In this document: piece after piece, positions 1 through 30,115 of the stretch
Numbering within the stretch: position 1 is the first letter of the stretch
How the letters are laid out: every line of letters begins with the position of its first letter
IMG/VR virus record: IMGVR_UViG_3300042889_001272
Location: 171,562-235,561 of that record
DNA: 64,000 nt
Direction: 5' to 3' (one strand)
The notes under the pieces: model-generated
What the model was told of the DNA's origin: nothing
What the model saw: the letters and a program-made list of their open reading frames with translations, nothing else
Databases searched by the model: none
Position numbers and translations under genes: made by a program

Positions 1-432
1 GTTGTCCTCACTGCCAAATTCCAGCATAATATCAGGATTCAAACTTAATGCATATTCAATTAATTGCTTTGCATAATGTAATTGGTTATCTTTAATACGA
101 CTAACATCAATATGTATTAAATCAAATCTAGAGGCAATATCAGCCGATATAGTTTTCATACAACGAATGATTGCATCTTCAATGGACAGTCCTCGATCTA
201 AATCACTGAAGTAAGGCCCGCAATGATCTCTGCACAACAGCAAGTTTGGATTTTTATATTGTTTTACTTGTTCTGCTAATTCAGCAGTAGTACAAACATA
301 TCCTGTAACATAGTCAACTTGATTGCGGCTGGCAATAATCATCAATGGATAATTATTATCTCTTGTATGTTTAGCAAGGATTGATATAATTTCCTTGCTC
401 ATTGGTCCGAAGCCCAATTTAAATTGTTTCAT
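1..432 (-). CDS. GatZ/KbaZ-like (tagatose-6-phosphate epimerase / class II tagatose-bisphosphate aldolase accessory) TIM-barrel protein, 3' end outside window
   Basis: Not in ORF track (runs off edge). Hand translation from ATG at 432: MKQFKLGFGPMSKEII...LMIIASRNQVDYVTGY...LCRDHCGPY...FDLIHIDVS...LEFGSEDN; matches in order the GatZ/KbaZ motifs xSNQVD-GGY, DHxGP, IHxDxS, xGTE. Overlaps stop of upstream AroE-like gene. Confidence 0.6.
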   Translation of the reverse strand, partial: MKQFKLGFGPMSKEIISILAKHTRDNNYPLMIIASRNQVDYVTGYVCTTAELAEQVKQYKNPNLLLCRDHCGPYFSDLDRGLSIEDAIIRCMKTISADIASRFDLIHIDVSRIKDNQLHYAKQLIEYALSLNPDIMLEFGSEDN

Positions 433-1159
433 ATTGTCTGCTTTCAATTTCGTTGTAGAGTTCTTCGCTGGGTTTTATCCCAGTGTAAATCTCAAATTGT
501 TTTAAGAATTGACTGCGATAAAACTCACGCCCAGATACATATTTAATATTATAATTCTGACATTGTTGTTTAAACTCGTTGTTCTTAATGGCCAAGTCGA
601 TTACCAACCTTGTGTCGGGGGGTATTTGTCCCAACATATATGGACTTTCATCAGTGCTTGTTCCCAATGCTGTACAGTTAATTATGATGTTTGCAGTCTT
701 ATACCGTTCATTCCATGTACTTAGATTCCTGGCACAAACATTTAAGTTTCCGTAATGTTCTTCTTCTAGATATTTAACGAACATACTGCCTATGGCTCCT
801 GCACCCAAAATAGTTATTTTATCTGTTTTATTGATATGCTTGCAAACATGTTCAACGCCTGCTAGATCGGCATTGTATCCATGAGTCTGTCCTTTGTTTA
901 TCTTAATAGTATTACAACTATTGTAAAGTTGTACATAGGGATGTTTTTTATTCAAATATGATATAATGGACTGCTTAAAAGGCATACTAACACTGATTCC
1001 AGCGACGTCGTCTTCAATGGCCTGCGTTATTGCTTTTTCAATATCAGTACAGGCCAATGGTTCATATGTTGCATCTATATTATAGTGTTTAAAGAATTCT
1101 GTGTAAAAATATTGCCCAGTCTTTCCTGGAAATTTACTTAGACTTATAAATTTTTTCAT
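419..1159 (-). CDS. Shikimate dehydrogenase-like (AroE family) NAD(P) oxidoreductase
   Basis: Motifs VSMPFK, NSCNT, GYNAD, ILGAGAIG, IINCTALG, VIDL, terminal Q; lacks the N-terminal HSxSP motif. Confidence 0.75.
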   Translation of the reverse strand: MKKFISLSKFPGKTGQYFYTEFFKHYNIDATYEPLACTDIEKAITQAIEDDVAGISVSMPFKQSIISYLNKKHPYVQLYNSCNTIKINKGQTHGYNADLAGVEHVCKHINKTDKITILGAGAIGSMFVKYLEEEHYGNLNVCARNLSTWNERYKTANIIINCTALGTSTDESPYMLGQIPPDTRLVIDLAIKNNEFKQQCQNYNIKYVSGREFYRSQFLKQFEIYTGIKPSEELYNEIESRQYETI

Positions 1160-1494
1160 CGTTTGTACGCTCTTATTTCTCTTATTTTATTATCTTGATC
1201 AAAGTCTATAACATCTATTACTGGAATTGCAACTTTATTATCTAATATAACTTTGATCTCTGCTATAACAGTATTATGGCCCATGGCAATTTTATCAATT
1301 TCTATTCGAATATTCCCCAACTGTGAAAACAATGTTTGATTAAATGCCAATACATTTTCTCTGCCGATCATTTGTCCGTCCCAGTCTGTTAATATTACAT
1401 TTTCAGCAAACATTGTTTCCAAGCTGGTCAAATCCTTTTCACTGAATGCTTTTAAGTAAAGCATGGCAATCTGACTCTGTGTGGCTTTACCCAC
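1156..1494 (-). CDS. SnoaL-like / NTF2-fold protein
   Basis: 112 aa; YLKAFSEKDL..LETMFAENVILTDW..GRENV and VIDVIDFD..KIREIRAY pattern typical of SnoaL_2 proteins. Confidence 0.75.
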   Translation of the reverse strand: MGKATQSQIAMLYLKAFSEKDLTSLETMFAENVILTDWDGQMIGRENVLAFNQTLFSQLGNIRIEIDKIAMGHNTVIAEIKVILDNKVAIPVIDVIDFDQDNKIREIRAYKR

Positions 1495-3019
1495 GATCTA
1501 ACTCCGCAAATAGTTTAATACCCAAGTACCATAGGAATATATCAAATGGAGCAGTGTGCAATGGGCTCATGTTCCAAAAGATTATCGGTATTAATTGTTG
1601 TACTTTATTATAATCTAAATTGTTATCTACGATGTATTTCTTCAACCGCTGTTGATATACGGTGATATGATCGACATTCGGAATACTCAATGTTACACTG
1701 CTGTCTTCGATTTCTATGTTAAAATTATGATTCTTAATGTTGGCATAGTTGATGATCAACCCCCCGGCCATTTTAGCCAAGTCGTAGTATATATCACCGT
1801 ACTCGACTAGGCCTGCGAACTCATGTCGCCAGTCAATGATCTTAAACTCTCCGCTGTCACTGATGACAATGTTATCAAACTGTAAATCACCGTGCAGGAA
1901 TCCCGGGCGGGTAACTTGTGCAAAATATTCCCAGTCTATCTTATTTAAATAATAACTATGGTCTCGGACTTCTATGCCGTCGATGTTGGTCACTGGTTTT
2001 AAACCAGGATACTTTTCTAAAAACTTGTTGATACGTGACAGTGATTTTGTTTTATAGAACTCAATGCTGGCATCATGTATATCAGCATCTATGTCTCGCC
2101 ACACATTTTTTTCCAGCCAATTAAGCAATTCATTGAATGCCACTGGATTGTTGAACTCGTATAATGTCTTGCCTGGAAAGAAATCATAGGCCATATAATT
2201 GCCGCTGTGCGTACAGTTGGCGGGGAAGACATGTGGATTAGCCAATACTTTGTCATACTTCTTTTTGGCAACTGTGTTATCTAGCCACCATTTAACTACA
2301 CGATTGTTACAAATATATGTTACTTCGTCTTTTTTTGTAAAGTCGAATTTTTGGCTTTTACTTAATTCGGTTTGATATATTGTTGGACTGCCAAAGTCTA
2401 ACCATGTATTAAGATTCGCAGTATCACTGCCTAGTTTAATAATACCAATAAACTCATTACTGTGACTTTGTTCCAAGTCTGCAAAAAATGTTGTATAGTC
2501 ATTTATATACATCAGCCCTGTAAATGCCGACCAAGTTGCAGGAGTAGTTTCTTTAAACTTGATCTCTTGTATATGAAAACTATTGTTTTTGTTAAACATT
2601 GTATAAAGATGCGTGTCTTGTTCAGGCACTGACTTAACAAAATAACAATCCTTGTTTCTAACTAAATCTACCACTGTTTGGTCAAAGTAAGTGTCACAGG
2701 GTACATACCAAAAAGGTGCATCTATTACCTCTTTACATTGTAGCAATGTGTATCCGGTTCCTGATTTAGCACTGGTCCAGTCGTTGATGTGTAAAAATTC
2801 TATATTTCTGTCACTATATGCTACATTACAAAAATCTATAATTTGTTCTTTTAGATGTCCAACAGGTATAATAAACTTCGTATCCTTGGGAAAGTTATCT
2901 ATGATATGTCCTAAAACTGGTTTATCTTTGTAAGGCAATAATGCCTTATTAAGATTCTTAGTATAATTGCCCATTCTACTGCCAAGCCCGGCTGTAGGAA
3001 TAACAACAGTATTACTCAT
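1487..3019 (-). CDS. Bifunctional sugar nucleotidyltransferase / APH-choline-kinase-like phosphotransferase
   Basis: N-term VVIPTAGLGSRM..NKALLP (GxGxR NTP-transferase), C-term HGDLQFDNI..IIDWR..YYDLAK kinase motifs. Start placed at 3019 (ATGAGTAA overlap with cupin stop). Confidence 0.8.
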   Translation of the reverse strand: MSNTVVIPTAGLGSRMGNYTKNLNKALLPYKDKPVLGHIIDNFPKDTKFIIPVGHLKEQIIDFCNVAYSDRNIEFLHINDWTSAKSGTGYTLLQCKEVIDAPFWYVPCDTYFDQTVVDLVRNKDCYFVKSVPEQDTHLYTMFNKNNSFHIQEIKFKETTPATWSAFTGLMYINDYTTFFADLEQSHSNEFIGIIKLGSDTANLNTWLDFGSPTIYQTELSKSQKFDFTKKDEVTYICNNRVVKWWLDNTVAKKKYDKVLANPHVFPANCTHSGNYMAYDFFPGKTLYEFNNPVAFNELLNWLEKNVWRDIDADIHDASIEFYKTKSLSRINKFLEKYPGLKPVTNIDGIEVRDHSYYLNKIDWEYFAQVTRPGFLHGDLQFDNIVISDSGEFKIIDWRHEFAGLVEYGDIYYDLAKMAGGLIINYANIKNHNFNIEIEDSSVTLSIPNVDHITVYQQRLKKYIVDNNLDYNKVQQLIPIIFWNMSPLHTAPFDIFLWYLGIKLFAELDRG

Positions 3020-3455
3020 GTTCGTAGCTGATTCTACCATGTGTTCTACCTGCGTCGTCTTGTAATCGAATTACATCATCTAATTCTGTTGTGCTGGTTT
3101 CCATGAATTCTAAATCAGTGTCAGCGATTACTCTGTGTACATAGCCTGGTTGTACATTGAATACAACACCGGCTTTAAGTTCTATACGTTCGAATGTATA
3201 TTCGTAGGCTTCTACTTGCCTAGACGTCATGCCTTGTTCTAAAAACTTGGCAATGTCCAGTGGTTCTCGACTGCGATGTAACATGCCTGTGCCGCTGAGA
3301 ACGTAGTTAGTTTCTATCTTATATTCGTGTACTTGTAAGCTGGTTCTATTGCCCGCTTTGAATAAAATACGTTTACTGGCATACGGAGTTTGGCTTCCAT
3401 CTGCAATCCAAAGCTCGTAGCCCCAGTGTTTAGTTACTTTTTTAATTTTCATCAT
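3012..3455 (-). CDS. Cupin, mannose-6-phosphate-isomerase (ManC C-terminal)-like
   Basis: KHWGYE, TSLQVHEYKIET, PGYVHRV, ETSTTELDDVIRLQDDAGR motifs. Confidence 0.75.
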   Translation of the reverse strand: MMKIKKVTKHWGYELWIADGSQTPYASKRILFKAGNRTSLQVHEYKIETNYVLSGTGMLHRSREPLDIAKFLEQGMTSRQVEAYEYTFERIELKAGVVFNVQPGYVHRVIADTDLEFMETSTTELDDVIRLQDDAGRTHGRISYEHE

Positions 3456-4249
3456 GCCCATCCATTTTCTTTTAACTTTGTTAATACTATGTTATATGCT
3501 TCATTATGCCCGTCGGGTCCAGTATGCCACGTTTTAATTTCATCTGGATATTTGACACTTAATTCTCCCCAGGACAATCTAACTAAATTTTCTTCATCCA
3601 TGTACTTAGCATATTCTTCTGGCTCTTGTGTCAGCATCAAATGTTTAATATTATGTTTCTTTAACAGTTGATGTGCCATGGTCATTACCCCAATACTTTG
3701 TAATCGATTTATCCTAGGGTCGTGTATAGTTGTGGCAAAGTCGTACAGTGTTTTCATTCTTTCTTTTGGTTCATTTTGAAATCTAGCATAATAGCCAGAA
3801 TACTTGTCATCTTTTCTAAATGTTTCCCAAAAGTCAATTACACCCATGTAATTTTCAGTGAACATTCCGCCCTTGTACAAAGGATCATCTTGCATGGGAT
3901 GCTTGTCTAAAACTTGATGATATGTTTCTGCTCTATAAGGAGGATATTGATGATAATTAACATCGACATTTGTTATTTCATGTCCGAATTTGTAGTCCAT
4001 GGGAAACCAATCAACCCTGTCATAACTAGTATGACTCACTAATACAATGTCATCTTCTGATGCAATATTTTTTACTGCATATTCTGCCTGCAAGTAAATG
4101 CTTAGATTCGTACTAGATCCTTTGGCAAGATTAAACAACTCTCTTTCAAGGTTGTTTGCCAATAATACTCCATATGGTTCTGTATGCAAATCTATGCACC
4201 CAATACCAATATTAAAACTATCACCACATATTATTAATTTTTTAGACAT
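3452..4249 (-). CDS. SGNH/GDSL-hydrolase-like protein
   Basis: IICGDSF nucleophile block, NLAKGSSTN block, C-terminal WHTGPDGH (DxxH-like). Confidence 0.6.
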   Translation of the reverse strand: MSKKLIICGDSFNIGIGCIDLHTEPYGVLLANNLERELFNLAKGSSTNLSIYLQAEYAVKNIASEDDIVLVSHTSYDRVDWFPMDYKFGHEITNVDVNYHQYPPYRAETYHQVLDKHPMQDDPLYKGGMFTENYMGVIDFWETFRKDDKYSGYYARFQNEPKERMKTLYDFATTIHDPRINRLQSIGVMTMAHQLLKKHNIKHLMLTQEPEEYAKYMDEENLVRLSWGELSVKYPDEIKTWHTGPDGHNEAYNIVLTKLKENGWA

Positions 4250-5039
4250 CTTTATATTTCTCTTCCCACCATTCATTTTGTTTATTTCTCAAATCCTGAA
4301 AACTATGTTCATGTTTTATCATACCATTTTCAAACATATCATTTATATTATCTCTTAATATCACACAATCCATGTATCTGTGAAGTAAGTTATCTATAGT
4401 CTTGCCGCGCTCTATTAAATATCTTGCAAATAAACTATGAATATCATATTTGTTCGAAATAGTTTCGTTGTAATAGTATACATAATAATCAAAAAACTCA
4501 GACAGTATTTTAAACATTTCCCAATCTACCATTAGACACGTATCATTAGTGGAAAAATAATCGCTGTTTGGATCAGTGCTTAATCCGCCGATGCTGTGCA
4601 TGTGGTCAGGAATAGGTAGCTGATTATTAAAATTTTTAATAGGCTGTAGATAACGAATATATAAATCTGGGCGCCATAATAATATCTTATTGTACTGTCT
4701 TACATGTTGCATTGACAACAAAACTTGATAAGCATATTTCCATTTAAATGCCATGCCGATTGTAGGGTGATATGCAAATTCAGGATTTTGTTTTAATTGT
4801 TGTTCCGTAAACATCATTTTATTATCTACTAATAAGTTTATTGATGAAAAGTTTACACTACTTCTATTAATAGTATTTGCTATAATATCAGTAGTACACT
4901 CTGTATGCATATCAGTTGACTGCGGATTATAAATTTTATTTTCAGTGATTAAATAATAATCAGCATCAATTATCCAACTGCTGGACGCTTCGACTAGATG
5001 TCGCATCACTCCAGAAATTATAATCGCAGTGTTAGACAT
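4242..5039 (-). CDS. Hypothetical protein of the 'AxxISGxxR ... RxD' family (glycosyltransferase-like, unproven)
   Basis: TAIIISGVMRH at N-term, KILLWRPDL; divergent paralogue of 5948-6859 and 6846-7694. Confidence 0.5.
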   Translation of the reverse strand: MSNTAIIISGVMRHLVEASSSWIIDADYYLITENKIYNPQSTDMHTECTTDIIANTINRSSVNFSSINLLVDNKMMFTEQQLKQNPEFAYHPTIGMAFKWKYAYQVLLSMQHVRQYNKILLWRPDLYIRYLQPIKNFNNQLPIPDHMHSIGGLSTDPNSDYFSTNDTCLMVDWEMFKILSEFFDYYVYYYNETISNKYDIHSLFARYLIERGKTIDNLLHRYMDCVILRDNINDMFENGMIKHEHSFQDLRNKQNEWWEEKYKDV

Positions 5040-5943
5040 ATAACTTATGTTGCTTAATATATCTTACTAATTCATTAGCCCATGCTTCATGACCTTCCGG
5101 GCTAGGATGCCAGCCAGTCAAAGGAGGATTGACATTATTAACAGGATCTTCTATGTAACTCTTAAAAGTATTATTGGAGTGATCTTTTTTATAAAATCTA
5201 ACAGGATCTATACTATCCCATAGTGCAGTATAATCATTGACGTGCAGTTCGCGAAGCATTGGATTTTTAGATTGTTGATATTTATGACCACCAATACTGC
5301 CTTTTAACTTTTTAACTTCGTCACTGACTTTTAAATCCTGCCAATCATTAGGATTGGCATTGGGCGTTTGATAGAAAGCATTAAAGCACATCCATTTAAT
5401 ATTATTAACTCTGCAAAAGTTCTGCAACTGCAAAACATTTAATACATATCTAGGAATATATTCTTCGGCATGCCATAGATATGCAACATATAATTCCCAG
5501 AATTTTTCCTGGGCAACTGCATCAAAGTGCGGGACCTGCGGCCACAATCTAAATAGATGCGATAACCCATCGTCTTTATACCAAAAGCTATTGCGTTCAG
5601 GACTTGTCCAGCCAATTATAACAAACAACTTATCAGTTGGAATATTATTTGCTATATATTTTTGAGAAATATAGTTAATAGTTCTACGTAGAATAGTACC
5701 GTTGTCATCGGCTGGCCAACTGAGATTAGTCACTGGAACTTTTAAAAGTTTTGCCAAATGTGTGGGGAAAATTTTAGGCGTTCTATAAGCATCATTTTCT
5801 TCTACAAAATCATAATGCCCCGGGTGTGTATCATCTGGATATCTTTTTGCAATATTAGGATCGACGATTTCACAGCCAAATGTCCAGCTGTCACCGTCAC
5901 ATATAATTTCTGGTTCTATGTTGACATCGATGATGTCAACCAT
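5032..5943 (-). CDS. SGNH/GDSL-hydrolase-like protein
   Basis: IICDGDSWTFG, NLSWPADDN, VIIGWTSPER, GWHPSPEGHEAWA. Confidence 0.6.
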   Translation of the reverse strand: MVDIIDVNIEPEIICDGDSWTFGCEIVDPNIAKRYPDDTHPGHYDFVEENDAYRTPKIFPTHLAKLLKVPVTNLSWPADDNGTILRRTINYISQKYIANNIPTDKLFVIIGWTSPERNSFWYKDDGLSHLFRLWPQVPHFDAVAQEKFWELYVAYLWHAEEYIPRYVLNVLQLQNFCRVNNIKWMCFNAFYQTPNANPNDWQDLKVSDEVKKLKGSIGGHKYQQSKNPMLRELHVNDYTALWDSIDPVRFYKKDHSNNTFKSYIEDPVNNVNPPLTGWHPSPEGHEAWANELVRYIKQHKLYV

Positions 5944-5947
5944 TCGT

Positions 5948-7694: not shown

Positions 7695-9091
7695 TTAGCA
7701 TTTTTCCATTTAGTATAGTAAGGTTCAAACTCAGGAAATGTAGCCAAAAAGTTTGTTCCTCTGCGTTTGTCGTGCTCATCCACAAACGCAACTAGATCCT
7801 TTTGATATACTGTAACTTCCTCTGGATCTTTTTGATTCATTGTTAATTCATATATACGTTTAAATTTTTCAGCTTCCCATTTGAAAAATCCTTGATTAGC
7901 ACTTCCATACCATTCACCGTTTTCTAAATTACGATACATCATTGTTACTTGATTGAAAATATATTCTTTTGCCCAACTTTCTGGCATAACATGAAAGATG
8001 CTTTGGTGCGCTGGGTGCCTTAGAAACGGTGCATCTAAAATTAACGGAGCATGAACATTGTTCCAGCCACCGAACTCGTTTTTAATATCTAATACATCTT
8101 GTAAGAATAACGAATATGTAGGTACACTAAGAACATTGTAGGTACTCATGATAGTAATAGTACACTCTGGGATTTCTTTTAATACCCTGCGGATGTTACT
8201 TAACCAAAGTTCATAATTCATACCATCACGAATATATTCTGCAGCCTTGCCATGAGCATCACAGCTTGTAAAGATTTTAAACTTTTTAACTTTCTTTTCT
8301 TCGCAGATAATTTTAACTTTTTCAAGGAATCTGTCAAATAACTGTGGTGGCACACACAAATTGCTGTTAATGCTCAGGTGTATATCTGGATTAGGATTTT
8401 CAATGACATAGTCAAGAACTTTAAAAGTATCTTTACTTAGTAAAGGTTCTCCGCCAGTTATCCTAAAGTGCTGAAGTTCTTTATAAACAGTGGGCCACCA
8501 TTTCCAGAATGCTTCCACATAAGGATTGTATTGATTGTGCGGAATAGGCATTTGATCAATTTGTTTAAGGCCAGCAATATCATTGAAACGGCCGTGTGTT
8601 GGATATGGGCCATGTTGTTTAACTTCTTCCATCCACAGACTACTGACCTGTGGACTACAATAGCTACATTTAAAATTACAGACGTTACTGAAACTGACTT
8701 CCAGATAACTAGGAACAACGTCACTGTCCCATGGCAAATTGCGAACTTCGTCAAAGTGAGGCTTTGCCCATACATCATAGCTCTTATAGATTCTATCGCT
8801 GAGTGCATCTGGTGCGCTGTCCTCTACTTTCCAGCAATAGTCACATTCTTTAGGACGGGCACCTTCCAACATTAACTTACGCTGTTCTTTTTTAAACTGT
8901 GTATTATGTAATGCACTGGGATTAGCGGCTAGTTCGTCTAAAGGAATTTTGTGCGTAGTGGGATGGTGACAACTGTGGTTGTGACCTGTTTGCAAATGCA
9001 GAGTTACCTGTTTCCACTTGGCAATACAAAAACTAGGACTAACGTCGTTAATCTTTTTTTGAAATGCAATGATATCTTTATTGTGTTCCAT
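7691..9091 (-). CDS. Radical SAM enzyme with N-terminal twitch/SPASM-like Cys cluster
   Basis: CNFKCSYC (CxxxCxxC), ITGGEPLL, N-terminal CIAKW..SCHH..ECDYCW. Confidence 0.9.
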   Translation of the reverse strand: MEHNKDIIAFQKKINDVSPSFCIAKWKQVTLHLQTGHNHSCHHPTTHKIPLDELAANPSALHNTQFKKEQRKLMLEGARPKECDYCWKVEDSAPDALSDRIYKSYDVWAKPHFDEVRNLPWDSDVVPSYLEVSFSNVCNFKCSYCSPQVSSLWMEEVKQHGPYPTHGRFNDIAGLKQIDQMPIPHNQYNPYVEAFWKWWPTVYKELQHFRITGGEPLLSKDTFKVLDYVIENPNPDIHLSINSNLCVPPQLFDRFLEKVKIICEEKKVKKFKIFTSCDAHGKAAEYIRDGMNYELWLSNIRRVLKEIPECTITIMSTYNVLSVPTYSLFLQDVLDIKNEFGGWNNVHAPLILDAPFLRHPAHQSIFHVMPESWAKEYIFNQVTMMYRNLENGEWYGSANQGFFKWEAEKFKRIYELTMNQKDPEEVTVYQKDLVAFVDEHDKRRGTNFLATFPEFEPYYTKWKNAK

Positions 9092-9092
9092 A

Positions 9093-10064
9093 TTAATTTA
9101 TCGAGTTATCTACTTGATTTTCTTTGACCTGGGCACCAAGTCTGGGTGGATTAATCCAGCTTTCCTTGAACATTTTACTTCCGTTATAGTCAAGTTCTGC
9201 AATCTCTAATCCTAGGTTTGTTCTCAATGATTCTCCTAGTTTGAATATTTCGTCTTGTAGTTTTTTCTTGTCATATGTCCAGCCACTGGCTAAACATTTT
9301 TCAGACTCTCCGGCAAACTGTGGACGGACAGCATTTTTCCAAAAATCATCATGCCATTCAAAATCTCTCACCAATGTGAAATCAAAGCCATCTCTGTCAA
9401 TATTAGACATATAGCAACCTAATCTAGTTCCGTACATGGCCCATAGTCCATTGTATACATCAGCACCTACACTAGCCCATACCAGCAAACGTTTATAATT
9501 TCTATCGTGTACTCGTTGTTTGAGTTGCCTAGGATCCACGGTTACTCCGCCTTCTAATGCTAGTTTAACACCTTCACGGAAGCCTGCGCGATATGCTTGG
9601 TAAGCACTGGCATTATTAAAAACGTCACTGTATATGTTATTCATTTGATGATAGTAAATGTCCCAGCAAAAGTCAACTTGTGCTTTGGGATCTTCTGCGG
9701 CTTCGTGTGTACGCATTTGTTCTACCACATGTTTGGGCCAAAGTTTAATGCCGCCATTGCCATAAACTAAACCGTTGACAACATTCTTGCCTGCCCATGA
9801 TATAACGTCATGTCGACTAATTTTCGACATATCCAATTCAATGCTTAAAAAGTCATCACGTACAATGTTATCTGCATCCACAGTAATAAATCTATCTGTT
9901 TCAGCGGCAGCGGCAGCGGCTTTGTGCGCGGCATCAAATCCTTTTACTCCATGCACACGCTTGGCCCATGGAGCTTTGTTACATAAGTCAGAATAGTTCT
10001 TATCGGCGTTGGGTTCGTCGTAGCTTAAAAATATAATATCAAAACTGGTAATCGGTGCTAGCAT
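9093..10064 (-). CDS. GT-A-fold glycosyltransferase-like protein
   Basis: DIIFLSYDEPNA, RVHGVKG, FITVDADN (DxD), NGLVYGNGGIKLW. Confidence 0.55.
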   Translation of the reverse strand: MLAPITSFDIIFLSYDEPNADKNYSDLCNKAPWAKRVHGVKGFDAAHKAAAAAAETDRFITVDADNIVRDDFLSIELDMSKISRHDVISWAGKNVVNGLVYGNGGIKLWPKHVVEQMRTHEAAEDPKAQVDFCWDIYYHQMNNIYSDVFNNASAYQAYRAGFREGVKLALEGGVTVDPRQLKQRVHDRNYKRLLVWASVGADVYNGLWAMYGTRLGCYMSNIDRDGFDFTLVRDFEWHDDFWKNAVRPQFAGESEKCLASGWTYDKKKLQDEIFKLGESLRTNLGLEIAELDYNGSKMFKESWINPPRLGAQVKENQVDNSIN

Positions 10065-11028
10065 CTTCTTCCTTTGCATGTAAATGAAAATAGTTACATA
10101 CTAATTTAACTTCTTTTTCACTTGTTAATTTTATCTCAAAATTATTATAGTTGTTAAGTTGGTTACTACTTAACTTGATAGAACCCAGCATCATTGTCGG
10201 GTCATGTTTTTCACAAATGTATAATTCTATGTCTTCATTTAATCTAAATGTGTTGATGTCTTGTATTGTACTTTGTAATTTTAACACATTACCCGTCTGT
10301 TTGTAAAGCAAATTTGGAAGATAATCTAAATTATTTTCTGCAACTAAGTTTTCATTTGATCGGTAGTCGTATGATATAATTTGGTTGTCGTTGTAATATA
10401 AAAATCCAATGTTTTTCAATCCCAACACATCGTCTGGCAACCATCTACACTTAAAACTAATATCGTGTTTTTCAAATAATTCTCTAGTAGACACAGTGAA
10501 TTTTCCAAACAGCTTGGATCTTTCATTTTTATCAATACAATATATTTCTATGTAATCGGGCAATTCTTCCAAGTGTTTTTCTGAAGTTTTTTCCAATAAC
10601 ATATTCAATTTAAAAATATTATAGTCAAAAATTAGCTGTATTTTTTTAGTTACTACATCACAGTGTAAGTGTATAAAGGACCGTTCTGAATTTGTGGCGA
10701 AAATAAAGTCAAATTCCCCTTTTCTGCGTTGCTTGTTATGTGTTAATTCAAATTCATTGGTTGTTTGATTTTTTTTAACTATGAGCTTAGACAGTGATAA
10801 TTTGTTTTCGAATAATTTTTTTGTTAATGTAGAAGCAGTTATAACAGCTATCGAATTTCTTTTCTCTGATGGAACAATTTCCATGGGTGATGCAACAACA
10901 GGCAAACCTGTAAGTCTATTATATTCGACATACACTTTTTGTTCGTTATTTGTATTTCTACTTTTAAGAACTCTTTTTTGTATGTCAAATTCTTCGACTT
11001 GATCGTCATCACTTACACAGTTGCTCAT
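10039..11028 (-). CDS. Hypothetical protein
   Basis: 329-aa ORF overlapping both neighbours (ATGA coupling); no recognisable motif. Confidence 0.6.
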   Translation of the reverse strand: MSNCVSDDDQVEEFDIQKRVLKSRNTNNEQKVYVEYNRLTGLPVVASPMEIVPSEKRNSIAVITASTLTKKLFENKLSLSKLIVKKNQTTNEFELTHNKQRRKGEFDFIFATNSERSFIHLHCDVVTKKIQLIFDYNIFKLNMLLEKTSEKHLEELPDYIEIYCIDKNERSKLFGKFTVSTRELFEKHDISFKCRWLPDDVLGLKNIGFLYYNDNQIISYDYRSNENLVAENNLDYLPNLLYKQTGNVLKLQSTIQDINTFRLNEDIELYICEKHDPTMMLGSIKLSSNQLNNYNNFEIKLTSEKEVKLVCNYFHLHAKEEDASTDYQF

Positions 11029-11843
11029 TTATTTTTAAAATTTTCTAATATTTCATCAGTGAGCCATCCCTTGGATTCATATTTAACCAAACCATGTTGT
11101 ACAAAATTTTCAATTTTAAGAGTACCTTTATCATTAACCCAGTAAGTTAAAAATTCACTCCAACGCTTGGTCCAATTGTTATTAATATAATTATTTTCTT
11201 GTTTTGACAGATCTATGCAATGCATAAAATCAAAGGTTGATATCTTCTTTTCAGTTATAGACTGCAATAAGGATAGCACCCAACTGGGCCATATATATTT
11301 GGGAAACGGTGGCATTTCATGTTCTTTGTCTGCAAAGAAATTTATATAATTGTCTTGATCATAACTGGAACATAACACACTGGCCAGTCCTAGAATGTAA
11401 TCACAGCCCTTGTCTTTGTTGAAAAATATTGCATTTGGAATACTGCTGACTCCAAAATTTTTAAATTCGATGCTGGCAGTACTGTACATCACTGGATTTA
11501 CAATTTCATTATTAAACAAATAGCGATGTTTTGGAAGAACAATGGGATCTAAACTTCGCAGATTTTCCCATATTCCTAGATCAAAATAAGTCAACAATTG
11601 ATCGGGCAGTAAGCCAATAGTCTTGGTATACGGACTCATTAACATTGATTTGAAATAGCATAATGTTGGATTCGTTTCATCTAAAAAAATGACATTGTCC
11701 GCTTCTATAAATTTTGCATCCGTACTATTAACAATGACACTGACAGGTCTAATAGAATCTATTTTTTTAATGCTTGTTATTAATAGATTTATTTCTACAG
11801 AGTTTTCATCAGTTCCATTAACTATTAAATAACCTTCACTCAT
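11025..11843 (-). CDS. Hypothetical protein, possibly degenerate GT8-like paralogue of the upstream gene
   Basis: GYLIV start and SPYTKTIGLLPDQ echo the SPYRQTLMIDVDY of 11836-12732 but without DxD. Confidence 0.4.
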   Translation of the reverse strand: MSEGYLIVNGTDENSVEINLLITSIKKIDSIRPVSVIVNSTDAKFIEADNVIFLDETNPTLCYFKSMLMSPYTKTIGLLPDQLLTYFDLGIWENLRSLDPIVLPKHRYLFNNEIVNPVMYSTASIEFKNFGVSSIPNAIFFNKDKGCDYILGLASVLCSSYDQDNYINFFADKEHEMPPFPKYIWPSWVLSLLQSITEKKISTFDFMHCIDLSKQENNYINNNWTKRWSEFLTYWVNDKGTLKIENFVQHGLVKYESKGWLTDEILENFKNK

Positions 11844-12732
11844 AGATTAACTCCTTGAGTTTAGTGTAGTGTCTTAAAATTGCCATTTTATTCATCAAGT
11901 GTATGTTTTCATTTATTATTCTACTGCAAATATTTTTCCATAACTCTTTGGGATCTGGACATAATAACACGTAGTCATTGAGAGATTTAAACTCTACAAT
12001 ATCATCAATTTGCTCACTGAAGCGCATTACTTTTCCTGGCAGTACTGCCACTGTATTTCCCACTGTTTGGCCATTTAGTATATGTGCGGCAATACTGGCA
12101 GCATAGTCTGTTCTGAATAACACTCCGGGAAACTTGTATAACCACTTGTAATAATGATAGTTTTCTTTAACATGTTCCCAAACACCAAAGAACAAACGAG
12201 CAACTTCACTGTCATTTCTCCAATACACAACTGTGCTCCACCACATGTCTATGCCATCTGGATGAAGTTTTTGTTCCCAGATTCTGGGCTTATAATTGCG
12301 AACGCTGACAGCGTCTTTATACATTGCAAGTTCGTAGTCTGTGTCGAACACTGCATCTAAACTATCATTGCCCACAATGTAGTCGACATCTATCATCAAT
12401 GTTTGTCGGTAAGGGCTTTTTTGAAAAATGCTGTGTTTATTTTTATTATTGAACTGTGTGCTGAATTCTGTCCAAGGACTGTCCCTGTGCATTCTTGTAT
12501 TACGTTCGTGCTGAATATCTTCCACAATGATATGATCAAAGGTATAAGATAATTGCTCAGGTGTGAGTTCCGCAGTTAACGCATTAAGAGTGTTTAAATC
12601 TGTGAGCAAAGTGACATGATTGTTTTTCATGTGCAGTTTTACATTTGCTGCCGCTATTATTGCCAATCTTTCATAGGCTATTTTGCCGTTGTTATACGCA
12701 ATCAGCAAAACACCTTTATCAAATTTAGACAT
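11836..12732 (-). CDS. GT8-like (GT-A) glycosyltransferase
   Basis: KGVLLIAYN, FDHII, KHSIFQKSPYRQTLMIDVDY (DxD), WSTVVYW, FRTDYA. Confidence 0.55.
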   Translation of the reverse strand: MSKFDKGVLLIAYNNGKIAYERLAIIAAANVKLHMKNNHVTLLTDLNTLNALTAELTPEQLSYTFDHIIVEDIQHERNTRMHRDSPWTEFSTQFNNKNKHSIFQKSPYRQTLMIDVDYIVGNDSLDAVFDTDYELAMYKDAVSVRNYKPRIWEQKLHPDGIDMWWSTVVYWRNDSEVARLFFGVWEHVKENYHYYKWLYKFPGVLFRTDYAASIAAHILNGQTVGNTVAVLPGKVMRFSEQIDDIVEFKSLNDYVLLCPDPKELWKNICSRIINENIHLMNKMAILRHYTKLKELIYE

Positions 12733-13078
12733 CTAATCCTACCAATCCTTTAGTGTCTCTTTTCTTTTTTAGTTTTTCGTAGTCGTTGTAATATTCGTTC
12801 AGTGCTTCTGTGTATGCACTGAACAATTTTGTATGAAAGTCTTGTAATGCTGTTATTAGTATTGGGTTTTCGTTGTCATCTATAAAAACAAATTGTTCGA
12901 CTTTTTTGTCTAACAAGTGCTGAATAAAATTGATTAGTTCCAGTGTGGCTGTGAACATTGAATTCGAATAGCCAATGGTTAACACGGTATTCATTCGCTG
13001 TTTAAGGTTTAGTTTTTGATTGTTTAAAGTTAAGCGATAGTTACTGAACTCTAACGCTTCTCTGAGTTTGTCATCCAT
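12725..13078 (-). CDS. Hypothetical protein, first gene of the late enzyme operon
   Basis: 117 aa, GGAG RBS, preceded by TATAAATA. Confidence 0.65.
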   Translation of the reverse strand: MDDKLREALEFSNYRLTLNNQKLNLKQRMNTVLTIGYSNSMFTATLELINFIQHLLDKKVEQFVFIDDNENPILITALQDFHTKLFSAYTEALNEYYNDYEKLKKKRDTKGLVGLDV

Positions 13079-13106
13079 TTTGACTCCATTATATACTAGT
13101 ATAATG

Positions 13107-13114
13107 TATTTATA
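13107..13114 (-). promoter_or_regulatory. T4-type late promoter TATAAATA
   Basis: Exact T4 gp55 consensus in a short intergenic gap; gp55 homologue encoded at 40857. Confidence 0.75.
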
Positions 13115-28838: not shown

Positions 28839-28866
28839 AAAAAAGGCACATAAAGTGCCTTTTTTT
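28839..28866. terminator. Bidirectional intrinsic terminator
   Basis: A6-GGCAC-ATAAA-GTGCC-T7 at the HNH stop. Confidence 0.8.
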
Positions 28867-29417: not shown

Positions 29418-29499
29418 CTTATAAATCGGTAAGCCGTAAAAATAATTATACAGCATTAAATATGTATTGTCAACTATGACAGTTTTTAAGGAGATTGAA

Positions 29500-29709: not shown

Positions 29710-29738
29710 TTGACACAAATTCGATAATATTGTATAAT
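29710..29738 (+). promoter_or_regulatory. Consensus sigma70 promoter
   Basis: TTGACA-17-TATAAT. Confidence 0.85.
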
Positions 29739-29768
29739 ACTTGCTTGTACCACACAAGCGAGTATTAT

Positions 29769-30088: not shown

Positions 30089-30115
30089 ATACACTTGTTC
30101 AACAAAGGAGTTACT

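What the first reader, a model, noticed from the sequence alone, without database searches (positions are those of the whole stretch)
1..13114. 13-kb late operon of 16 coupled genes that looks like a complete phage glycan synthesis and decoration pathway
Seen: all genes from 13078 to beyond the left edge are on one strand, joined by overlaps or gaps of at most 4 nt, start behind a perfect TATAAATA and directly follow tail/baseplate genes. Content: 2-3 GT-A-like transferases, a radical SAM, three SGQxR paralogues, two SGNH-like proteins and five sugar-precursor enzymes. Established: T4-type late promoters drive virion morphogenesis genes; GT + SGNH + NDP-sugar enzymes is the make-up of bacterial capsule/O-antigen loci. 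Inference: late timing argues against DNA hypermodification (needed during replication) and for building a glycan on the virion (fibres or capsid) or on the infected cell surface. Virion glycosylation is established for giant eukaryotic viruses and some mycobacteriophages, much less for T4-like myoviruses.
Basis: partly seen in the sequence, partly recalled or inferred. Interest (0 to 1): 0.7.

Follow-up and report, generated by a model that had tools for sequence, protein, structure and literature searches.

The report
Phage glycan factory rich in radical-SAM enzymes
The flagged 13 kb is the first third of a 40-kb, 42-gene block in an uncultured lake-water T4-like jumbo phage that looks built to make a heavily tailored, strain-variable sugar chain with about nine glycosyltransferases and thirteen radical-SAM enzymes. 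It sits right after the tail-fibre genes, and what the sugar chain is attached to is still unknown.

Summary
There are 16 same-strand, overlapping genes behind a perfect TATAAATA (window 13107-13114), directly after tail-fibre and baseplate genes. It is only the head of the unit: the block runs 27 kb past the left window edge, giving 42 genes over about 39.8 kb.

Predicted structures confirm GT-A folds for g05 and for the 'SGQxR' paralogues. With profile links, the block holds about 9 GT-A-like transferases, 4 SGNH-like proteins, a carbamoyltransferase, a sugar-activation branch, and 13 radical-SAM proteins. Eight of those carry 9 N-terminal-twitch domains (NCBIfam NF033640). None of the 42 proteins has a membrane helix.

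About 80 related viral contigs and one isolate (Ralstonia phage RsoM2USA) keep the order fibre genes, g01, g02, g05, radical SAM. Downstream cassettes vary, even between strains about 94% identical in DNA. Bdellovibrionota chromosomes hold the same families inside GT2-rich glycan clusters.

The late promoter is credible in this phage: it has a gp55 homologue, and the motif is enriched between genes. Many relatives instead place a consensus sigma-70 promoter there, so the timing argument is weak.

Best reading is a soluble glycan-building and tailoring module, most likely decorating virion (fibre) proteins. Host-envelope remodelling and a free metabolite are not excluded. I class it as a new variant of a known kind.

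The parts
13107..13114 (-). TATAAATA, a T4-type late-promoter-like element 28 nt upstream of the g01 ATG. A GGAG ribosome-binding site lies between them.
   Evidence: Sequence. It is the only minus-strand TATAAATA between genome 120 and 190 kb. The motif class is enriched in intergenic DNA. The genome encodes a gp55 homologue.
12725..13078 (-). g01, 117 aa, no known family. It is the conserved first gene of the module and the predicted small partner subunit of g02.
   Evidence: Conserved in about 80 viral loci and in RsoM2USA ORF354. Complex prediction with g02 gave ipSAE 0.76 against a best control of 0.00.
11836..12732 (-). g02, 298 aa, a GT8-like GT-A candidate with a conserved DxD motif (D115, D117).
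   Evidence: No Pfam hit. Protein-atlas feature neighbours include Mannosyl_trans3 and Glyco_transf_8 clusters at 0.95-0.96. DxD is conserved in 40 homologues. Homologue in RsoM2USA ORF353.
11025..11843 (-). g03, 272 aa, a divergent paralogue of g02 (N-terminal about 160 aa). Fast evolving.
   Evidence: hhalign g02 vs g03 gives probability 97.4%. Identity drops to 41-50% where g05 stays at 73-80%.
10039..11028 (-). g04, 329 aa, unknown. It is the fastest-evolving core gene.
   Evidence: No family hit at E<0.01; only a weak Ig_2 hit at E 0.065. It is 29-39% identical in loci where g05 is 73-80% identical.
9093..10079 (-). g05, 328 aa. It has a GT-A (GT2-like) N-terminal domain with an invariant D68-x-D70, plus a helical C-terminal domain. 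Paralogues g18, g19 and g20 lie left of the window.
   Evidence: AF2 model pLDDT 86. Foldseek matches TarS, TarP, hyaluronan synthase, PBCV-1 A64R and SunS. AFDB matches GT2-like clusters. VIA Z is 9-10.7 to GT-A enzymes, but about 9 to IspD and MobA as well. Alignment.
7691..9091 (-). g06, 466 aa, a radical SAM enzyme with an N-terminal twitch domain (NF033640). It is the first of 9 such domains in the block.
   Evidence: NCBIfam score 337.8 bits against a cut-off of 170. CxxxCxxC at residue 138. 40% identical to RsoM2USA ORF349.
6846..7694 (-). g07, 282 aa, 'SGQxR' family. GT-A fold transferase, WavE / TOD1-MUCI70-like.
   Evidence: AF2 model pLDDT 92. Foldseek matches B3GalT5, BoGT6a, GTA/GTB and glycogenin. 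AFDB matches WavE, glycosyltransferase and capsular polysaccharide protein clusters with TM by query 0.45-0.65.
5948..6865 (-). g08, 305 aa, SGQxR paralogue of g07 (GT-A).
   Evidence: BLASTP E 2e-12. hhalign probability 100%.
5032..5988 (-). g09, 318 aa, SGNH-like (DUF6071), with a GDS block near the N terminus.
   Evidence: Pfam DUF6071 E 2.4e-13. Motif visible in the sequence. hhalign links to g11 (87%) and g27 (91%).
4242..5039 (-). g10, 265 aa, third SGQxR-family GT-A. It is present or absent between near-identical strains.
   Evidence: hhalign to g08 93.6%. Precisely missing in L006, which is about 94% identical in DNA.
3452..4276 (-). g11, 274 aa, SGNH-like (GDS block, C-terminal D-G-H).
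   Evidence: Motifs in the sequence. hhalign to g09 87%. No Pfam hit.
3012..3461 (-). g12, 149 aa, cupin.
   Evidence: Pfam Cupin_2 and MannoseP_isomer, both below cut-off. PHROG 7851 E 7e-15.
1487..3040 (-). g13, 517 aa, a fusion of a nucleotidyltransferase (UGPase/LicC-like) and an APH/choline-kinase-like kinase. It reads as an activation module: X to X-phosphate to NDP-X.
   Evidence: Pfam NTP_transf_3 and APH. NCBIfam AglF, GlmU and HddC-type hits. PDB sequence hits to UGPase and LicC.
1156..1494 (-). g14, 112 aa, SnoaL-like (NTF2 fold) protein.
   Evidence: Pfam SnoaL_2 E 3.6e-13.
419..1159 (-). g15, 246 aa, an AroE-family (shikimate dehydrogenase-like, SdhL-type) NAD(P) oxidoreductase.
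   Evidence: Pfam Shikimate_dh_N. Best PDB sequence match is HI0607 SdhL, E 1.8e-19. The family also contains 5-ketofructose reductase.
1..447 (-). g16, N-terminal 149 aa of a 360-aa class II ketose-bisphosphate aldolase / GatZ-like protein. The gene runs over the window edge.
   Evidence: Pfam GatZ_KbaZ-like. 1253 environmental homologues carry PF08013.
13133..14212 (-). u1 (context): 359-aa fibre-region protein directly upstream. It carries a long (GY)n/(GGGY)n tract and is a candidate acceptor (speculative).
   Evidence: Sequence. The tract is conserved but length-variable in closer relatives. Conserved synteny u3-u2-u1-g01.
14214..15152 (-). u2 (context): 312-aa tail-fibre-like protein.
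   Evidence: PHROG tail-fibre and virion structural protein hits. The N terminus matches RsoM2USA ORF355, the gene just before its g01 homologue.
40857..41729 (+). gp55-like late sigma factor (context). It makes the TATAAATA reading plausible.
   Evidence: phrog_12791 E 6.7e-73 and phrog_234 E 6e-23.

Best explanation
Window 1-13114 is the promoter-proximal third of one 42-gene, roughly 39.8-kb transcription unit (genome 184639 down to 144871) of a T4-like jumbo phage from lake water.

I read the unit as a cytoplasmic, membrane-independent factory that builds and tailors an oligosaccharide on a soluble acceptor.

Shown:
- About nine GT-A-fold transferases in three families: g02/g03 (GT8-like), g05/g18/g19/g20 (GT2-like) and g07/g08/g10 (WavE-like).
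- Four SGNH-like proteins and one carbamoyltransferase.
- 13 radical-SAM proteins, 8 of which carry 9 N-terminal-twitch domains.
- No membrane protein among the 42.
- A late-type promoter.
- A fixed position right after the fibre genes, with a conserved core (g01, g02, g05, N-twitch radical SAM, g18, g21) and strain-variable cassettes.

Inferred:
- g16, g15, g14, g12 and g13 make and nucleotide-activate an unusual sugar or sugar-like unit.
- The GT-A enzymes add sugars stepwise, with g01 acting as a small subunit of g02.
- The radical-SAM enzymes tailor sugars or the acceptor by hydrogen-atom abstraction (oxidation, epimerisation or deoxygenation, in the manner of BtrN).
- The SGNH-like proteins and the carbamoyltransferase add or remove O-acyl and O-carbamoyl groups.

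The acceptor is most likely a virion protein of the adjacent fibre module, giving each strain its own glycan coat.

My odds: about 0.8 that this is a glycan-building module, and about 0.45 that the acceptor is a virion protein. The confidence figure given for this explanation refers to the combined statement.
For: Extent and coupling of the unit.

Folds and families:
- g05 GT-A fold.
- g07 GT-A fold.
- g02 feature neighbours GT8 and Mannosyl_trans3, with conserved DxD.
- Paralogy links among the GT-A-like and SGNH-like proteins.
- Carbamoyltransferase E 2.6e-53.
- g13 hits to sugar-1-phosphate nucleotidyltransferase families.
- NF033640 scores of 248-416 bits against a cut-off of 170, for 9 domains.
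- Intact CxxxCxxC in all 14 radical-SAM cores, and no hydrophobic 19-mer above 1.46 in any of the 42 proteins.

Functional links:
- g01-g02 complex ipSAE 0.76 against a best control of 0.00. That mark was reached by 51 of 78 solved complexes and 2 of 108 mismatched pairs. The runs agree on at least 96% of contacts, and partner pLDDT is 84.
- A natural fusion of a g18-like GT with an N-twitch radical SAM (P0201), and fusions of g36-like with two N-twitch domains.

Conservation:
- Synteny with fibre genes in about 80 viral loci and in RsoM2USA.
- Of 42 distinct architectures, 33 place an N-twitch radical SAM directly after g05, and loci hold 0-7 copies.
- Gene-level gain and loss between strains 84-94% identical in DNA.
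- A relative's cassette carries RmlC.
- Bacterial homologues sit next to a GT4 in Cribrihabitans, and inside GT2-rich clusters in Bdellovibrionota together with g21-, g22-, g30-, g41- and g06-like genes and a PMT_2.

Promoter class.

DNA chemistry: no ThyA-type hydroxymethylase, and ThyX is present.
Against: - No acceptor has been identified, and no expression, glycan or virion data exist for this phage.
- g02, g03, g04, g21, g26 and g36 have no family assignment. The GT-A fold is shared with nucleotidyltransferases: IspD and MobA score Z about 9 against g05.
- No characterised member of NF033640 was found, so the chemistry of 9 domains is a guess.
- In many relatives the operon has a consensus sigma-70 (early-type) promoter. 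That fits poorly with a purely morphogenetic role.
- Soluble GT-A enzymes of the GT8, GT2 and WavE kinds normally act on lipid-linked LPS or polysaccharide intermediates at the inner membrane. Absence of membrane proteins therefore does not exclude a host-envelope target.
- The SnoaL-like, AroE-like, nitroreductase, 2OG-oxygenase-like and SPASM-type genes would also suit a secondary-metabolite or peptide-modifying cluster.
- The contig is only about 66% complete.
Confidence: 0.5

Rival explanations
1. Host-envelope remodelling. The soluble transferases act at the cytoplasmic face on the host's own lipid-linked LPS-core, O-unit or capsule intermediates, which the host then exports. This changes the cell surface, either to exclude superinfecting phages or to stop progeny sticking to debris. 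It is the reading given in the literature to GT-rich clusters of T4-like jumbo cyanophages.
For: - Iyer et al. 2021 (PMC7824862, section 3.4.10) and the S-SCSM2R paper (PMC12801897) interpret polymorphic GT clusters this way.
- g07's structural neighbours include WavE (LPS core) and capsular polysaccharide proteins.
- GT8 and GT2 are typical LPS and O-antigen families (established knowledge).
- Many relatives drive the operon from a consensus sigma-70, early-type promoter.
- The cultured relative RsoM2USA has a 270-min latent period, long enough for surface turnover (abstract).
- The Bdellovibrionota homologous cluster includes a membrane PMT_2.
Against: - In this phage the only promoter is of the late type.
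- No membrane, export or lipid-carrier enzyme is present among the 42 proteins.
- The position is strictly conserved at the end of the fibre module across very divergent phages.
- The host is unknown, so compatibility with its pathways cannot be judged.
Confidence: 0.2
2. A free secondary metabolite, or a glycosylated and radical-SAM-modified peptide or protein product that is not part of the virion. The block would be a phage-borne biosynthetic gene cluster for an oligosaccharide- or aminoglycoside-like compound or a glyco-RiPP, released at lysis or acting inside the cell.
For: - The enzyme mix is typical of natural-product clusters: SnoaL-like, AroE-like, aldolase-like, carbamoyltransferase, nitroreductase, Asp/Asn-hydroxylase-like, and many radical-SAM enzymes including SPASM-type ones. 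The nearest named families of the latter are peptide or cofactor maturases, though far below their cut-offs.
- g05's structural neighbours include the peptide S-glycosyltransferases SunS and ThuS.
- Iyer et al. propose a secondary metabolite for a cyanophage cluster with carbamoyltransferases, 2OG oxygenases and cupins.
Against: - No precursor-peptide-like small ORF was found. The five ORFs under 120 aa are g01 (a g02 partner), a SnoaL-like protein, two split-off domains and a DUF7009-like protein.
- No transporter or self-resistance gene is present.
- The minimal version in RsoM2USA is just GT-A-like genes plus one radical SAM and small unknowns.
- Fixed linkage to fibre genes and O-antigen-like gene-level polymorphism fit a surface structure better.
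Confidence: 0.15
3. DNA hypermodification. The transferases and radical-SAM enzymes decorate phage DNA bases with sugars or other groups to evade restriction.
For: - Phage DNA glycosylation is well established (T4 glucosyl-hmC; own knowledge).
- Early-type promoters in relatives would suit it.
- Radical-SAM enzymes take part in some base-modification pathways (own knowledge).
- The S-SCSM2R authors raise this possibility for their GTs.
Against: - No ThyA-family hydroxymethylase was found in 235 kb, and a ThyX (ordinary dTMP synthesis) is present.
- Nine or more transferases plus O-acyl and carbamoyl tailoring far exceed any known DNA modification.
- The promoter here is of the late type.
- The block is linked to fibre genes.
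- Caveat: the contig is only about 66% complete.
Confidence: 0.05

Closest known systems
'LPS / capsular-polysaccharide modification' gene clusters of T4-like jumbo cyanophages (P-SSM2 15-gene cluster, S-SCSM1, S-SCSM2R with 13 GTs)
   Same: Both occur in T4-like large myoviruses. Both have many paralogous glycosyltransferases plus sugar-nucleotide enzymes, cupins and carbamoyltransferases. Both are polymorphic between related phages, and neither has an experimentally known function (PMC7824862; PMC12801897).
   Different: - No NAD-dependent epimerase/dehydratase or PfkB kinase, which are the mainstay there.
- The GTs here belong to families without Pfam models.
- 13 radical-SAM proteins, of which 9 domains are N-twitch type.
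- 42 genes in a single co-oriented block, fixed directly after the fibre genes.
- A conserved g01-g02-g05 core.
Virion glycosylation in mycobacteriophages (Freeman et al. 2023, Cell Host Microbe; PMC10527164, cited through)
   Same: Phage-encoded glycosyltransferases placed beside structural genes, with the glycan ending on capsid or tail proteins. This is the mechanism I favour here.
   Different: That system uses one to a few GTs and host sugar nucleotides, occurs in siphoviruses of Actinobacteria, and has been shown by mass spectrometry. Here there are about 9 GT-A-like proteins, 13 radical-SAM proteins and tailoring enzymes, and nothing has been shown experimentally.
Glycan machinery of giant eukaryotic viruses (PBCV-1 A64R; Mimivirus R699 and fibril glycans)
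   Same: Virus-encoded, host-independent, cytoplasmic multi-enzyme glycan synthesis for virion proteins. A64R and R699 are among g05's structural neighbours.
   Different: Different virus realm and different hosts. Radical-SAM enzymes are not part of those pathways as far as I know (own knowledge).
Twitch/SPASM radical-SAM enzymes acting on carbohydrates or peptides (BtrN, anSME, sactisynthases)
   Same: A CxxxCxxC radical-SAM core plus an auxiliary Cys-rich Fe-S domain.
   Different: Here the twitch domain is N-terminal (NF033640). No characterised member was found in the searchable literature. The domains occur as up to nine paralogous copies beside GT-A genes.
T4-like environmental viral genome with 12 radical-SAM genes plus an A-type Fe-S carrier (Nishimura et al. 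2017, PMC5332604)
   Same: The same striking load of radical-SAM genes, together with ATC genes, in an aquatic T4-like phage. This genome has 17 PF04055 hits and two ATC genes.
   Different: That paper only counted them as Fe-S-related metabolism. It did not describe an operon, a link to glycosyltransferases, or a link to fibre genes.

Membership tests
GT-A fold glycosyltransferase (g05 and paralogues g18-g20) | Nucleotide-diphospho-sugar transferase (Rossmann-like alpha/beta/alpha) fold | tested here: met
   AF2 model pLDDT 86. Foldseek and VIA give Z 9-10.7 to B4GALNT1, SpsA, TarP, SunS, A64R and R699 over residues about 7-156. AFDB matches GT2-like clusters.
GT-A fold glycosyltransferase (g05 and paralogues g18-g20) | DxD metal/nucleotide-sugar binding motif | tested here: met
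   D68 and D70 are invariant in 17 sequences, including the three paralogues.
GT-A fold glycosyltransferase (g05 and paralogues g18-g20) | Glycosyl transfer rather than nucleotidyl transfer | not testable with these tools
   IspD and MobA nucleotidyltransferases of the same superfold also score Z about 9. An enzyme assay is needed.
GT-A fold glycosyltransferase (SGQxR family g07, g08, g10) | GT-A fold | tested here: met
   AF2 model pLDDT 92. PDB matches B3GalT5, BoGT6a, GTA/GTB and glycogenin. AFDB matches WavE, TOD1-MUCI70 and glycosyltransferase clusters with TM by query 0.45-0.65.
GT-A fold glycosyltransferase (SGQxR family g07, g08, g10) | Canonical DxD | tested here: inconclusive
   R152, D154 and D197 are invariant and D146 nearly so, but there is no clear DxD. 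Some GT-A enzymes, such as BoGT6a, are metal-independent.
CAZy GT8 (g02, g03) | Match to the Glyco_transf_8 profile | tested here: not met
   No Pfam hit at E<0.01. The only support is language-model feature similarity of 0.95-0.96 to GT8 and Mannosyl_trans3 clusters and a conserved DxD. I treat them as 'GT8-like', not as members.
SGNH hydrolase/acyltransferase (g09, g11, g27, g28) | Block I GDS(L) Ser and block V Asp/His | tested here: inconclusive
   GDS is present in g09 and g11. The C-terminal motif is E/D-G-H rather than DxxH. g09 matches DUF6071. The others are linked only by hhalign at 87-98%. No fold was predicted.
NCBIfam NF033640 (N-terminal twitch radical SAM) | Score above the curated cut-off (170 bits) over the full model | tested here: met
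   Nine domains score 248-416 bits, in g06, g29, g30, g31, g32 (two domains), g35, g38 and g39.
NCBIfam NF033640 (N-terminal twitch radical SAM) | CxxxCxxC SAM cluster plus N-terminal Cys ligands | tested here: met
   CxxxCxxC is present in every copy. C22, C41, C83 and C86 are invariant in the paralogue alignment.
T4-type late transcription unit | TATAAATA at about -10 and a gp55-type sigma factor in the genome | tested here: met
   Motif at window 13107-13114. gp55 homologue with E 6.7e-73. 36 of 60 ATAAATA copies are intergenic, many just ahead of structural genes.
T4-type late transcription unit | Transcribed late in infection | not testable with these tools
   Only metatranscriptome contigs of related strains were found, with no time axis. 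Relatives carry sigma-70-type promoters at the same position.
Bacterial O-antigen / capsule locus (Wzx/Wzy- or ABC-dependent) | Initiating polyprenyl-phosphate transferase, flippase/polymerase or ABC transporter (membrane proteins) | tested here: not met
   No such Pfam family is present. No hydrophobic segment with Kyte-Doolittle (19-residue) score of 1.6 or more occurs in any of the 42 proteins.
RiPP biosynthetic cluster | Precursor peptide gene plus a cognate maturase | tested here: inconclusive
   No precursor-like ORF was seen. The SPASM-type radical-SAM proteins g22 and g24/g25 score far below every maturase cut-off.
Phage DNA hypermodification system | Pyrimidine hydroxymethylase (ThyA family) supplying the modifiable base | tested here: not met
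   No PF00303 match in 235 kb. ThyX is present. The contig is about 66% complete, so absence is not proven.

The most novel reading that the evidence does not exclude
Aquatic T4-like jumbo phages carry a previously undescribed enzyme logic, shared with Bdellovibrionota. GT-A transferases are paired, and occasionally fused, with N-terminal-twitch radical-SAM enzymes that perform radical tailoring of a protein-linked glycan. The phages would use this system, in up to 42-gene versions, to clothe their tail fibres in a strain-specific glycan coat. That coat would evolve by cassette exchange in the way an O-antigen does, and could influence adsorption, stability or recognition.
Probability: 0.25. 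Interest if true: 0.85.

Novelty: new variant of a known kind. Interest (0 to 1): 0.7.

Why it matters
If the reading is right, a sixth of this 235.6-kb contig is spent on making one elaborate glycan. That is far beyond any documented phage glycosylation system, and it uses a radical-SAM family (NF033640) with no known chemistry.

The core genes are abundant and unannotated:
- At least 8,000 g05-like proteins turned up, with no Pfam domain or informative name among the 120 best listed.
- About 1,250 clusters at 50% identity match the N-twitch radical SAM at E of 1e-30 or better.
- Only one of 50,697 deposited phage genomes carries them.

Three consequences would follow. A large block of viral 'dark matter' would become interpretable. 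New carbohydrate radical chemistry would become testable. And the open question of what the big GT clusters of T4-like aquatic phages are for would get a tractable handle, because Ralstonia phage RsoM2USA carries an 8-gene minimal version.

Tried and rejected
- Megablast of the operon and of the neighbouring 17 kb against GenBank phages found nothing.
- Single-sequence and profile searches of g02, g05, g07 and g16 against PDB sequences found nothing usable.
- Pfam at E up to 5 for g01, g03, g04, g21, g26-g28, g36, g42 and u1 gave only noise-level hits.
- PHROGs gave no function for most genes.
I re-ran it without them.
- The radical-SAM paralogue alignment was too divergent for a genome scan, and relatives cannot be drawn for a virus record.
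- A single-protein scan of bacterial genomes with g05 found nothing. The alignment-based scan then worked.
- tblastn of g29 against plasmids found nothing.
- Cluster look-ups of ten N-twitch representatives returned only unnamed metagenomic proteins.
- Metatranscriptome contigs cover parts of the operon at 90-99% identity, but give no timing and may include DNA carry-over. I do not use them as evidence of expression.
- Literature searches for jumbo phage + radical SAM + glycosyltransferase, and for the N-twitch family, found no functional study.
- I considered and dropped the idea that the block was recently acquired. Its GC content (0.31-0.40) is close to that of the rest of the window (0.33-0.43).
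- I considered g01 as a fibre chaperone. The supported g01-g02 interface makes a transferase subunit more likely.
- The idea that the (GY)n tract of u1 is the acceptor or a radical-SAM cross-link substrate is kept only as speculation, because the tract is missing in more distant relatives that keep the module.

Full report
**What is there**

The window is the right-hand end (genome 171562-235561) of a 235,561-bp IMG/VR viral contig. The DNA is held by lake-water metagenome runs, and CheckV rates the contig about 66% complete.

Neighbours overlap by 4-41 nt or lie 1 nt apart. A perfect TATAAATA sits at window 13107-13114, 28 nt before the ATG of the first gene (13078), with a GGAG in between.

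Upstream on the same strand lie:
- a 359-aa protein (u1);
- a tail-fibre-like protein (u2) and a 191-aa protein (u3);
- a 2991-aa virion structural protein;
- gp6-like and gp25-like baseplate wedge proteins.

The phage also encodes gp55-like late sigma, gp20 portal, gp23 capsid and gp46/47 homologues. Its baseplate protein is closest to jumbo myoviruses such as Atu_ph07 and PA5oct.

**The unit is three times longer than reported**

Laying out the whole contig shows the co-oriented, overlapping gene chain continuing past the left window edge to genome position 144871. That makes 42 genes (g01-g42) over 39.8 kb, about 17% of the contig.

Only three gaps exceed 4 nt:
- 24 nt between g17 and g18;
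- 16 nt between g23 and g24, containing an AATAAATA;
- 222 nt between g40 and g41.

The block ends convergently against a ThyX gene.

The part outside the window encodes:
- a carbamoyltransferase (E 2.6e-53);
- three paralogues of g05;
- a nitroreductase-family protein;
- an Asp/Asn-beta-hydroxylase-family protein;
- twelve more radical-SAM proteins.

In total, 13 proteins carry 14 intact CxxxCxxC cores. Nine domains in eight proteins (g06, g29, g30, g31, g32 with two, g35, g38, g39) belong to NCBIfam NF033640, the N-terminal-twitch radical SAM family. They score 248-416 bits against a cut-off of 170.

**What the window genes are**

Most have no Pfam or PHROG assignment, so I tested folds.

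*g05.* Modelled with 16 homologues, it gave pLDDT 86.
- Its first 150 or so residues superpose on GT-A glycosyltransferases, with VIA Z 9-10.7 to B4GALNT1, SpsA, TarP, SunS/ThuS, STIV A197 and Mimivirus R699.
- Foldseek adds TarS, hyaluronan synthase and PBCV-1 A64R, and AFDB returns GT2-like clusters.
- D68-x-D70 is invariant.
- Caveat: nucleotidyltransferases of the same superfold (IspD, MobA) reach Z about 9.

- It matches GT-A enzymes in the PDB: B3GalT5, BoGT6a, GTA/GTB and glycogenin.
- In AFDB it matches clusters named WavE, TOD1/MUCI70-like glycosyltransferase and capsular polysaccharide protein, with TM by query 0.45-0.65.
- The three SGQxR proteins are therefore further transferases.

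*Other links.*
- g02 has a conserved DxD and language-model neighbours in GT8 and Mannosyl_trans3 clusters.
- g03 is its divergent paralogue (hhalign 97%).
- g09 and g11 carry GDS blocks. g09 matches DUF6071.
- g27 and g28 link to g09 by hhalign (91-98%).

*Tally for the whole block:* about 9 GT-A-like and 4 SGNH-like proteins.

*The 'precursor' genes.* These are a cupin (g12), a UGPase/LicC-like nucleotidyltransferase fused to an APH-type kinase (g13), a SnoaL-like protein (g14), an AroE/SdhL-like oxidoreductase (g15) and a class II ketose-bisphosphate-aldolase/GatZ-like protein (g16). Only g13 points specifically at sugar activation. The proposed route is inference: aldol condensation, reduction, isomerisation, phosphorylation, then nucleotidylation.

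**No membrane step**

None of the 42 proteins has a hydrophobic 19-residue segment above 1.46 on the Kyte-Doolittle scale. No initiating transferase, flippase, polymerase or transporter family is present. This is therefore not a capsule or O-antigen locus in make-up. Whatever is built is built on something available in the cytoplasm.

**Links between the parts**

- A complex prediction for g02 with the small first gene g01 passed the tool's test. ipSAE was 0.76 against a best control of 0.00. That mark was reached by 51 of 78 solved complexes and 2 of 108 mismatched pairs. The three runs share at least 96% of contacts, and partner pLDDT is 84. The model supports binding but does not show it. 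I read g01 as a subunit of the g02 transferase.
- Among 150 representatives of the N-twitch family, one protein (P0201) fuses a g18-like GT-A domain to an N-twitch radical SAM. A marine cluster (P0217, P0326) fuses a g36-like domain to two N-twitch domains.
- A 688-aa viral cluster carrying Asp_Arg_Hydrox ranks among g36's feature neighbours at 0.84, which is a lead only.

**Comparative picture**

*g05 and the N-twitch family in databases.*
- g05 has at least 8,000 homologues in metagenomes. The 120 best listed carry no Pfam domain and no informative name.
- The N-twitch query g29 finds 1,257 clusters (at 50% identity) at E of 1e-30 or better.
- Among 50,697 deposited phage genomes, only Ralstonia phage RsoM2USA has g05 and g06 homologues.
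- RsoM2USA carries an 8-gene run, ORFs 354-347. Six of them match g01, g02, g05, g06, g18 and g21. ORFs 352 and 351 have no tblastn match.
- The run directly follows ORF355, which is u2-like. ORF361, which is u4-like and was identified in virions by mass spectrometry, lies a few genes further upstream.

*Gene order in related viral contigs.* Eighty IMG/VR contigs show the same order: u3-u2-u1, g01, g02, (g03, g04), g05, then variable content.
- Among 42 distinct architectures with at least 5 kb downstream, the gene after g05 is an N-twitch radical SAM in 33.
- 38 of the 42 have at least one N-twitch copy, and counts range from 0 to 7.
- The window's g07-g17 segment is a cassette found only in closer relatives. 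L025 goes from g05 almost straight to g18-g22.
- g03 and g04 diverge much faster than g01, g02 and g05.

*Variation between close strains.*
- One strain at about 94% DNA identity lacks g10 exactly.
- Two others, at 84-92% identity, carry an extra insert of about 850 nt between g13 and g14.
- Another relative's cassette includes an RmlC-type dTDP-sugar epimerase and a DUF6071.

A fixed core with exchangeable cassettes is the pattern seen in surface-glycan loci.

**Bacterial relatives**

An alignment-based scan of 185,579 species genomes found g05-family genes (35-44% identity) in two kinds of bacteria.

- *Cultured Rhodobacterales* (Roseibium, Sulfitobacter, Ruegeria, Tateyamaria, Cribrihabitans). 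In Cribrihabitans marinus the gene sits in a three-gene unit with a GT4.
- *Bdellovibrionota.* In a 2.9-Mb Bacteriovoracaceae chromosome it lies among several Pfam GT2 genes, a PMT_2 and a radical SAM, next to cbb3 oxidase genes. In a Halobacteriovoraceae contig the GT2-rich cluster also contains g21-, g22-, g30-, g41- and g06-like genes, at up to 60% identity to the phage proteins.

Co-location with canonical glycosyltransferases in cells is the strongest independent support that the phage families, including the radical-SAM ones, work on glycans.

**Timing**

*In this genome it holds up.*
- TATAAATA is not over-represented in total: 19 copies against roughly 23 per strand expected from composition (my arithmetic).
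- Its placement is non-random. 14 of 19 copies, and 36 of 60 ATAAATA, are intergenic in a genome that is 6.3% non-coding. Many sit just ahead of structural genes.
- A second class, perfect TTGACA-N17-TATAAT, marks 31 intergenic sites in regions of small genes. None falls in the operon, and none is seen in the gap before g01.

*In relatives it does not generalise.*
- Of 49 non-redundant upstream regions of g01 in relatives, 11 have TATAAATA and 21 have ATAAATA.
- Many others have a near-perfect sigma-70 promoter at that spot.
- In L062, L070 and L053 the tail genes keep ATAAATA while the operon gets TTGACA-17-TATAAT.

The module is thus a self-contained unit whose promoter class switches between relatives. 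The inference 'late, therefore virion and not DNA' is weak as a general argument.

**DNA modification**

This looks unlikely on other grounds. No ThyA-family hydroxymethylase occurs in 235 kb and a ThyX is present. The enzyme set also far exceeds any known base decoration. The incomplete contig forbids certainty.

**Interpretation**

I commit to a soluble glycan-building and tailoring module, with odds of about 0.8. The adjacent virion (fibre-region) proteins are the most likely acceptor, with odds of about 0.45.

Reasons for favouring a virion acceptor:
- The linkage to the fibre module is invariant over deep divergence.
- The promoter here is of the late type.
- No membrane or export genes are present.
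- Virus-encoded virion glycosylation has precedents: mycobacteriophages (Freeman et al. 2023, cited) and giant viruses, whose GTs are among g05's structural neighbours.

Rivals, detailed in their own sections:
- *Host LPS or capsule remodelling at the cytoplasmic face.* This is the published reading of GT clusters in T4-like cyanophages (PMC7824862; PMC12801897). It is favoured by the early-type promoters in relatives and by the usual substrates of GT8, GT2 and WavE-like enzymes.
- *A free secondary metabolite or glyco-peptide.*
- *DNA hypermodification.*

The chemistry of the N-twitch radical-SAM enzymes is unknown. I found no characterised member.

**Novelty**

Large polymorphic GT clusters in T4-like aquatic phages are known but unexplained. 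A T4-like environmental genome with 12 radical-SAM genes and an Fe-S carrier has also been noted in passing (PMC5332604).

As far as the searchable literature shows, the following are new:
- the 42-gene single unit;
- the conserved g01-g02-g05 / N-twitch radical SAM core, fixed behind the fibre genes;
- the recognition that three unannotated families are GT-A transferases;
- the GT / radical-SAM pairing shared with Bdellovibrionota;
- the promoter-class switching between relatives.

I class it as a new variant of a known kind, of high interest because an isolate (RsoM2USA) makes it testable.

Noticed in passing
window 13133-14212 (-), u1: The protein just upstream of the operon carries a 50-60-residue Gly-Tyr tract (GGGGYGYGYGYGYGYGYGYGNGGGYGYG...). 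Closer relatives keep a (GY)n or (GGY)n tract of differing length and period. More distant ones lack it. Its function is unknown. It could be a flexible or adhesive linker, or a modification substrate.
   Followed up: partly
genome-wide; e.g. window 28800 (before the gp25-like gene) and window 40782: About 16 of 36 intergenic NATAAATA sites lie 4-8 nt, mostly exactly 5 nt, before the ATG. With T4 promoter geometry (start six nt after the motif; own knowledge) these late mRNAs would begin at the start codon, making them leaderless. The operon's own promoter has a 28-nt spacer with a GGAG.
   Followed up: partly
window 29445-30411 (genome 201006-201972) and genome 134.6-141.7 kb: Clusters of perfect TTGACA-N17-TATAAT promoters occur in front of small genes. 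Genome-wide, 31 of 66 sites matching at least 11 of 12 positions are intergenic. This looks like the early promoter class of the phage.
   Followed up: partly
L053, L062, L070, L037 and other related loci, about 60 nt upstream of their g01 homologues: The promoter class in front of the same operon switches between relatives: TATAAATA in close ones, consensus sigma-70 in many others, and both in L037. Their neighbouring tail genes keep ATAAATA.
   Followed up: yes
genome 154554-157106 (g32); 163281-164235 (g24, g25); 153525-154561 (g33, g34); left of the window: g32 is a tandem fusion of two N-twitch radical-SAM units. g24+g25 and g33+g34 look like split versions of the single-chain paralogues g22 and g40/g41.
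   Followed up: partly
genome 41176-41478 and 66872-67165; radical-SAM genes also at about 1.5, 22.4, 24.6 and 143.3 kb: The phage encodes two A-type Fe-S carrier proteins. It has 17 Pfam Radical_SAM matches in 235 kb, several of them outside the operon. This is the same combination Nishimura et al. 2017 remarked on in a marine T4-like genome.
   Followed up: partly
L128/L155, L154, L130, L111 (Bdellovibrionota); L152 (Cribrihabitans marinus): Predatory-bacterium chromosomes hold GT2-rich clusters with g05-, g21-, g22-, g30-, g41- and g06-like genes at up to 60% identity to the phage proteins. Roseobacter-group isolates hold a lone g05 homologue next to a GT4, flanked by caspase-like Peptidase_C14 proteins.
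   Followed up: partly
window 28865-29404 (-): An HNH endonuclease gene sits between the gp25-like baseplate gene and the early-promoter region.
   Followed up: no
genome 146589-146810 (between g40 and g41): This is the only long gap in the block (222 nt). It is closed in the g41 frame but open in another frame with an internal ATG. It may hold a small gene, a frameshifted start of g41, or a decayed gene.
   Followed up: no
window 4240-5038 vs L006; window 1493-1497 vs L035 and L009: There are gene-level polymorphisms between close strains. g10 is cleanly absent in one strain, with 17 nt in its place. An insert of about 850 nt lies between g13 and g14 in two others. g09, g11 and g14 drop to 54-79% protein identity where neighbours are 94-99%.
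   Followed up: yes
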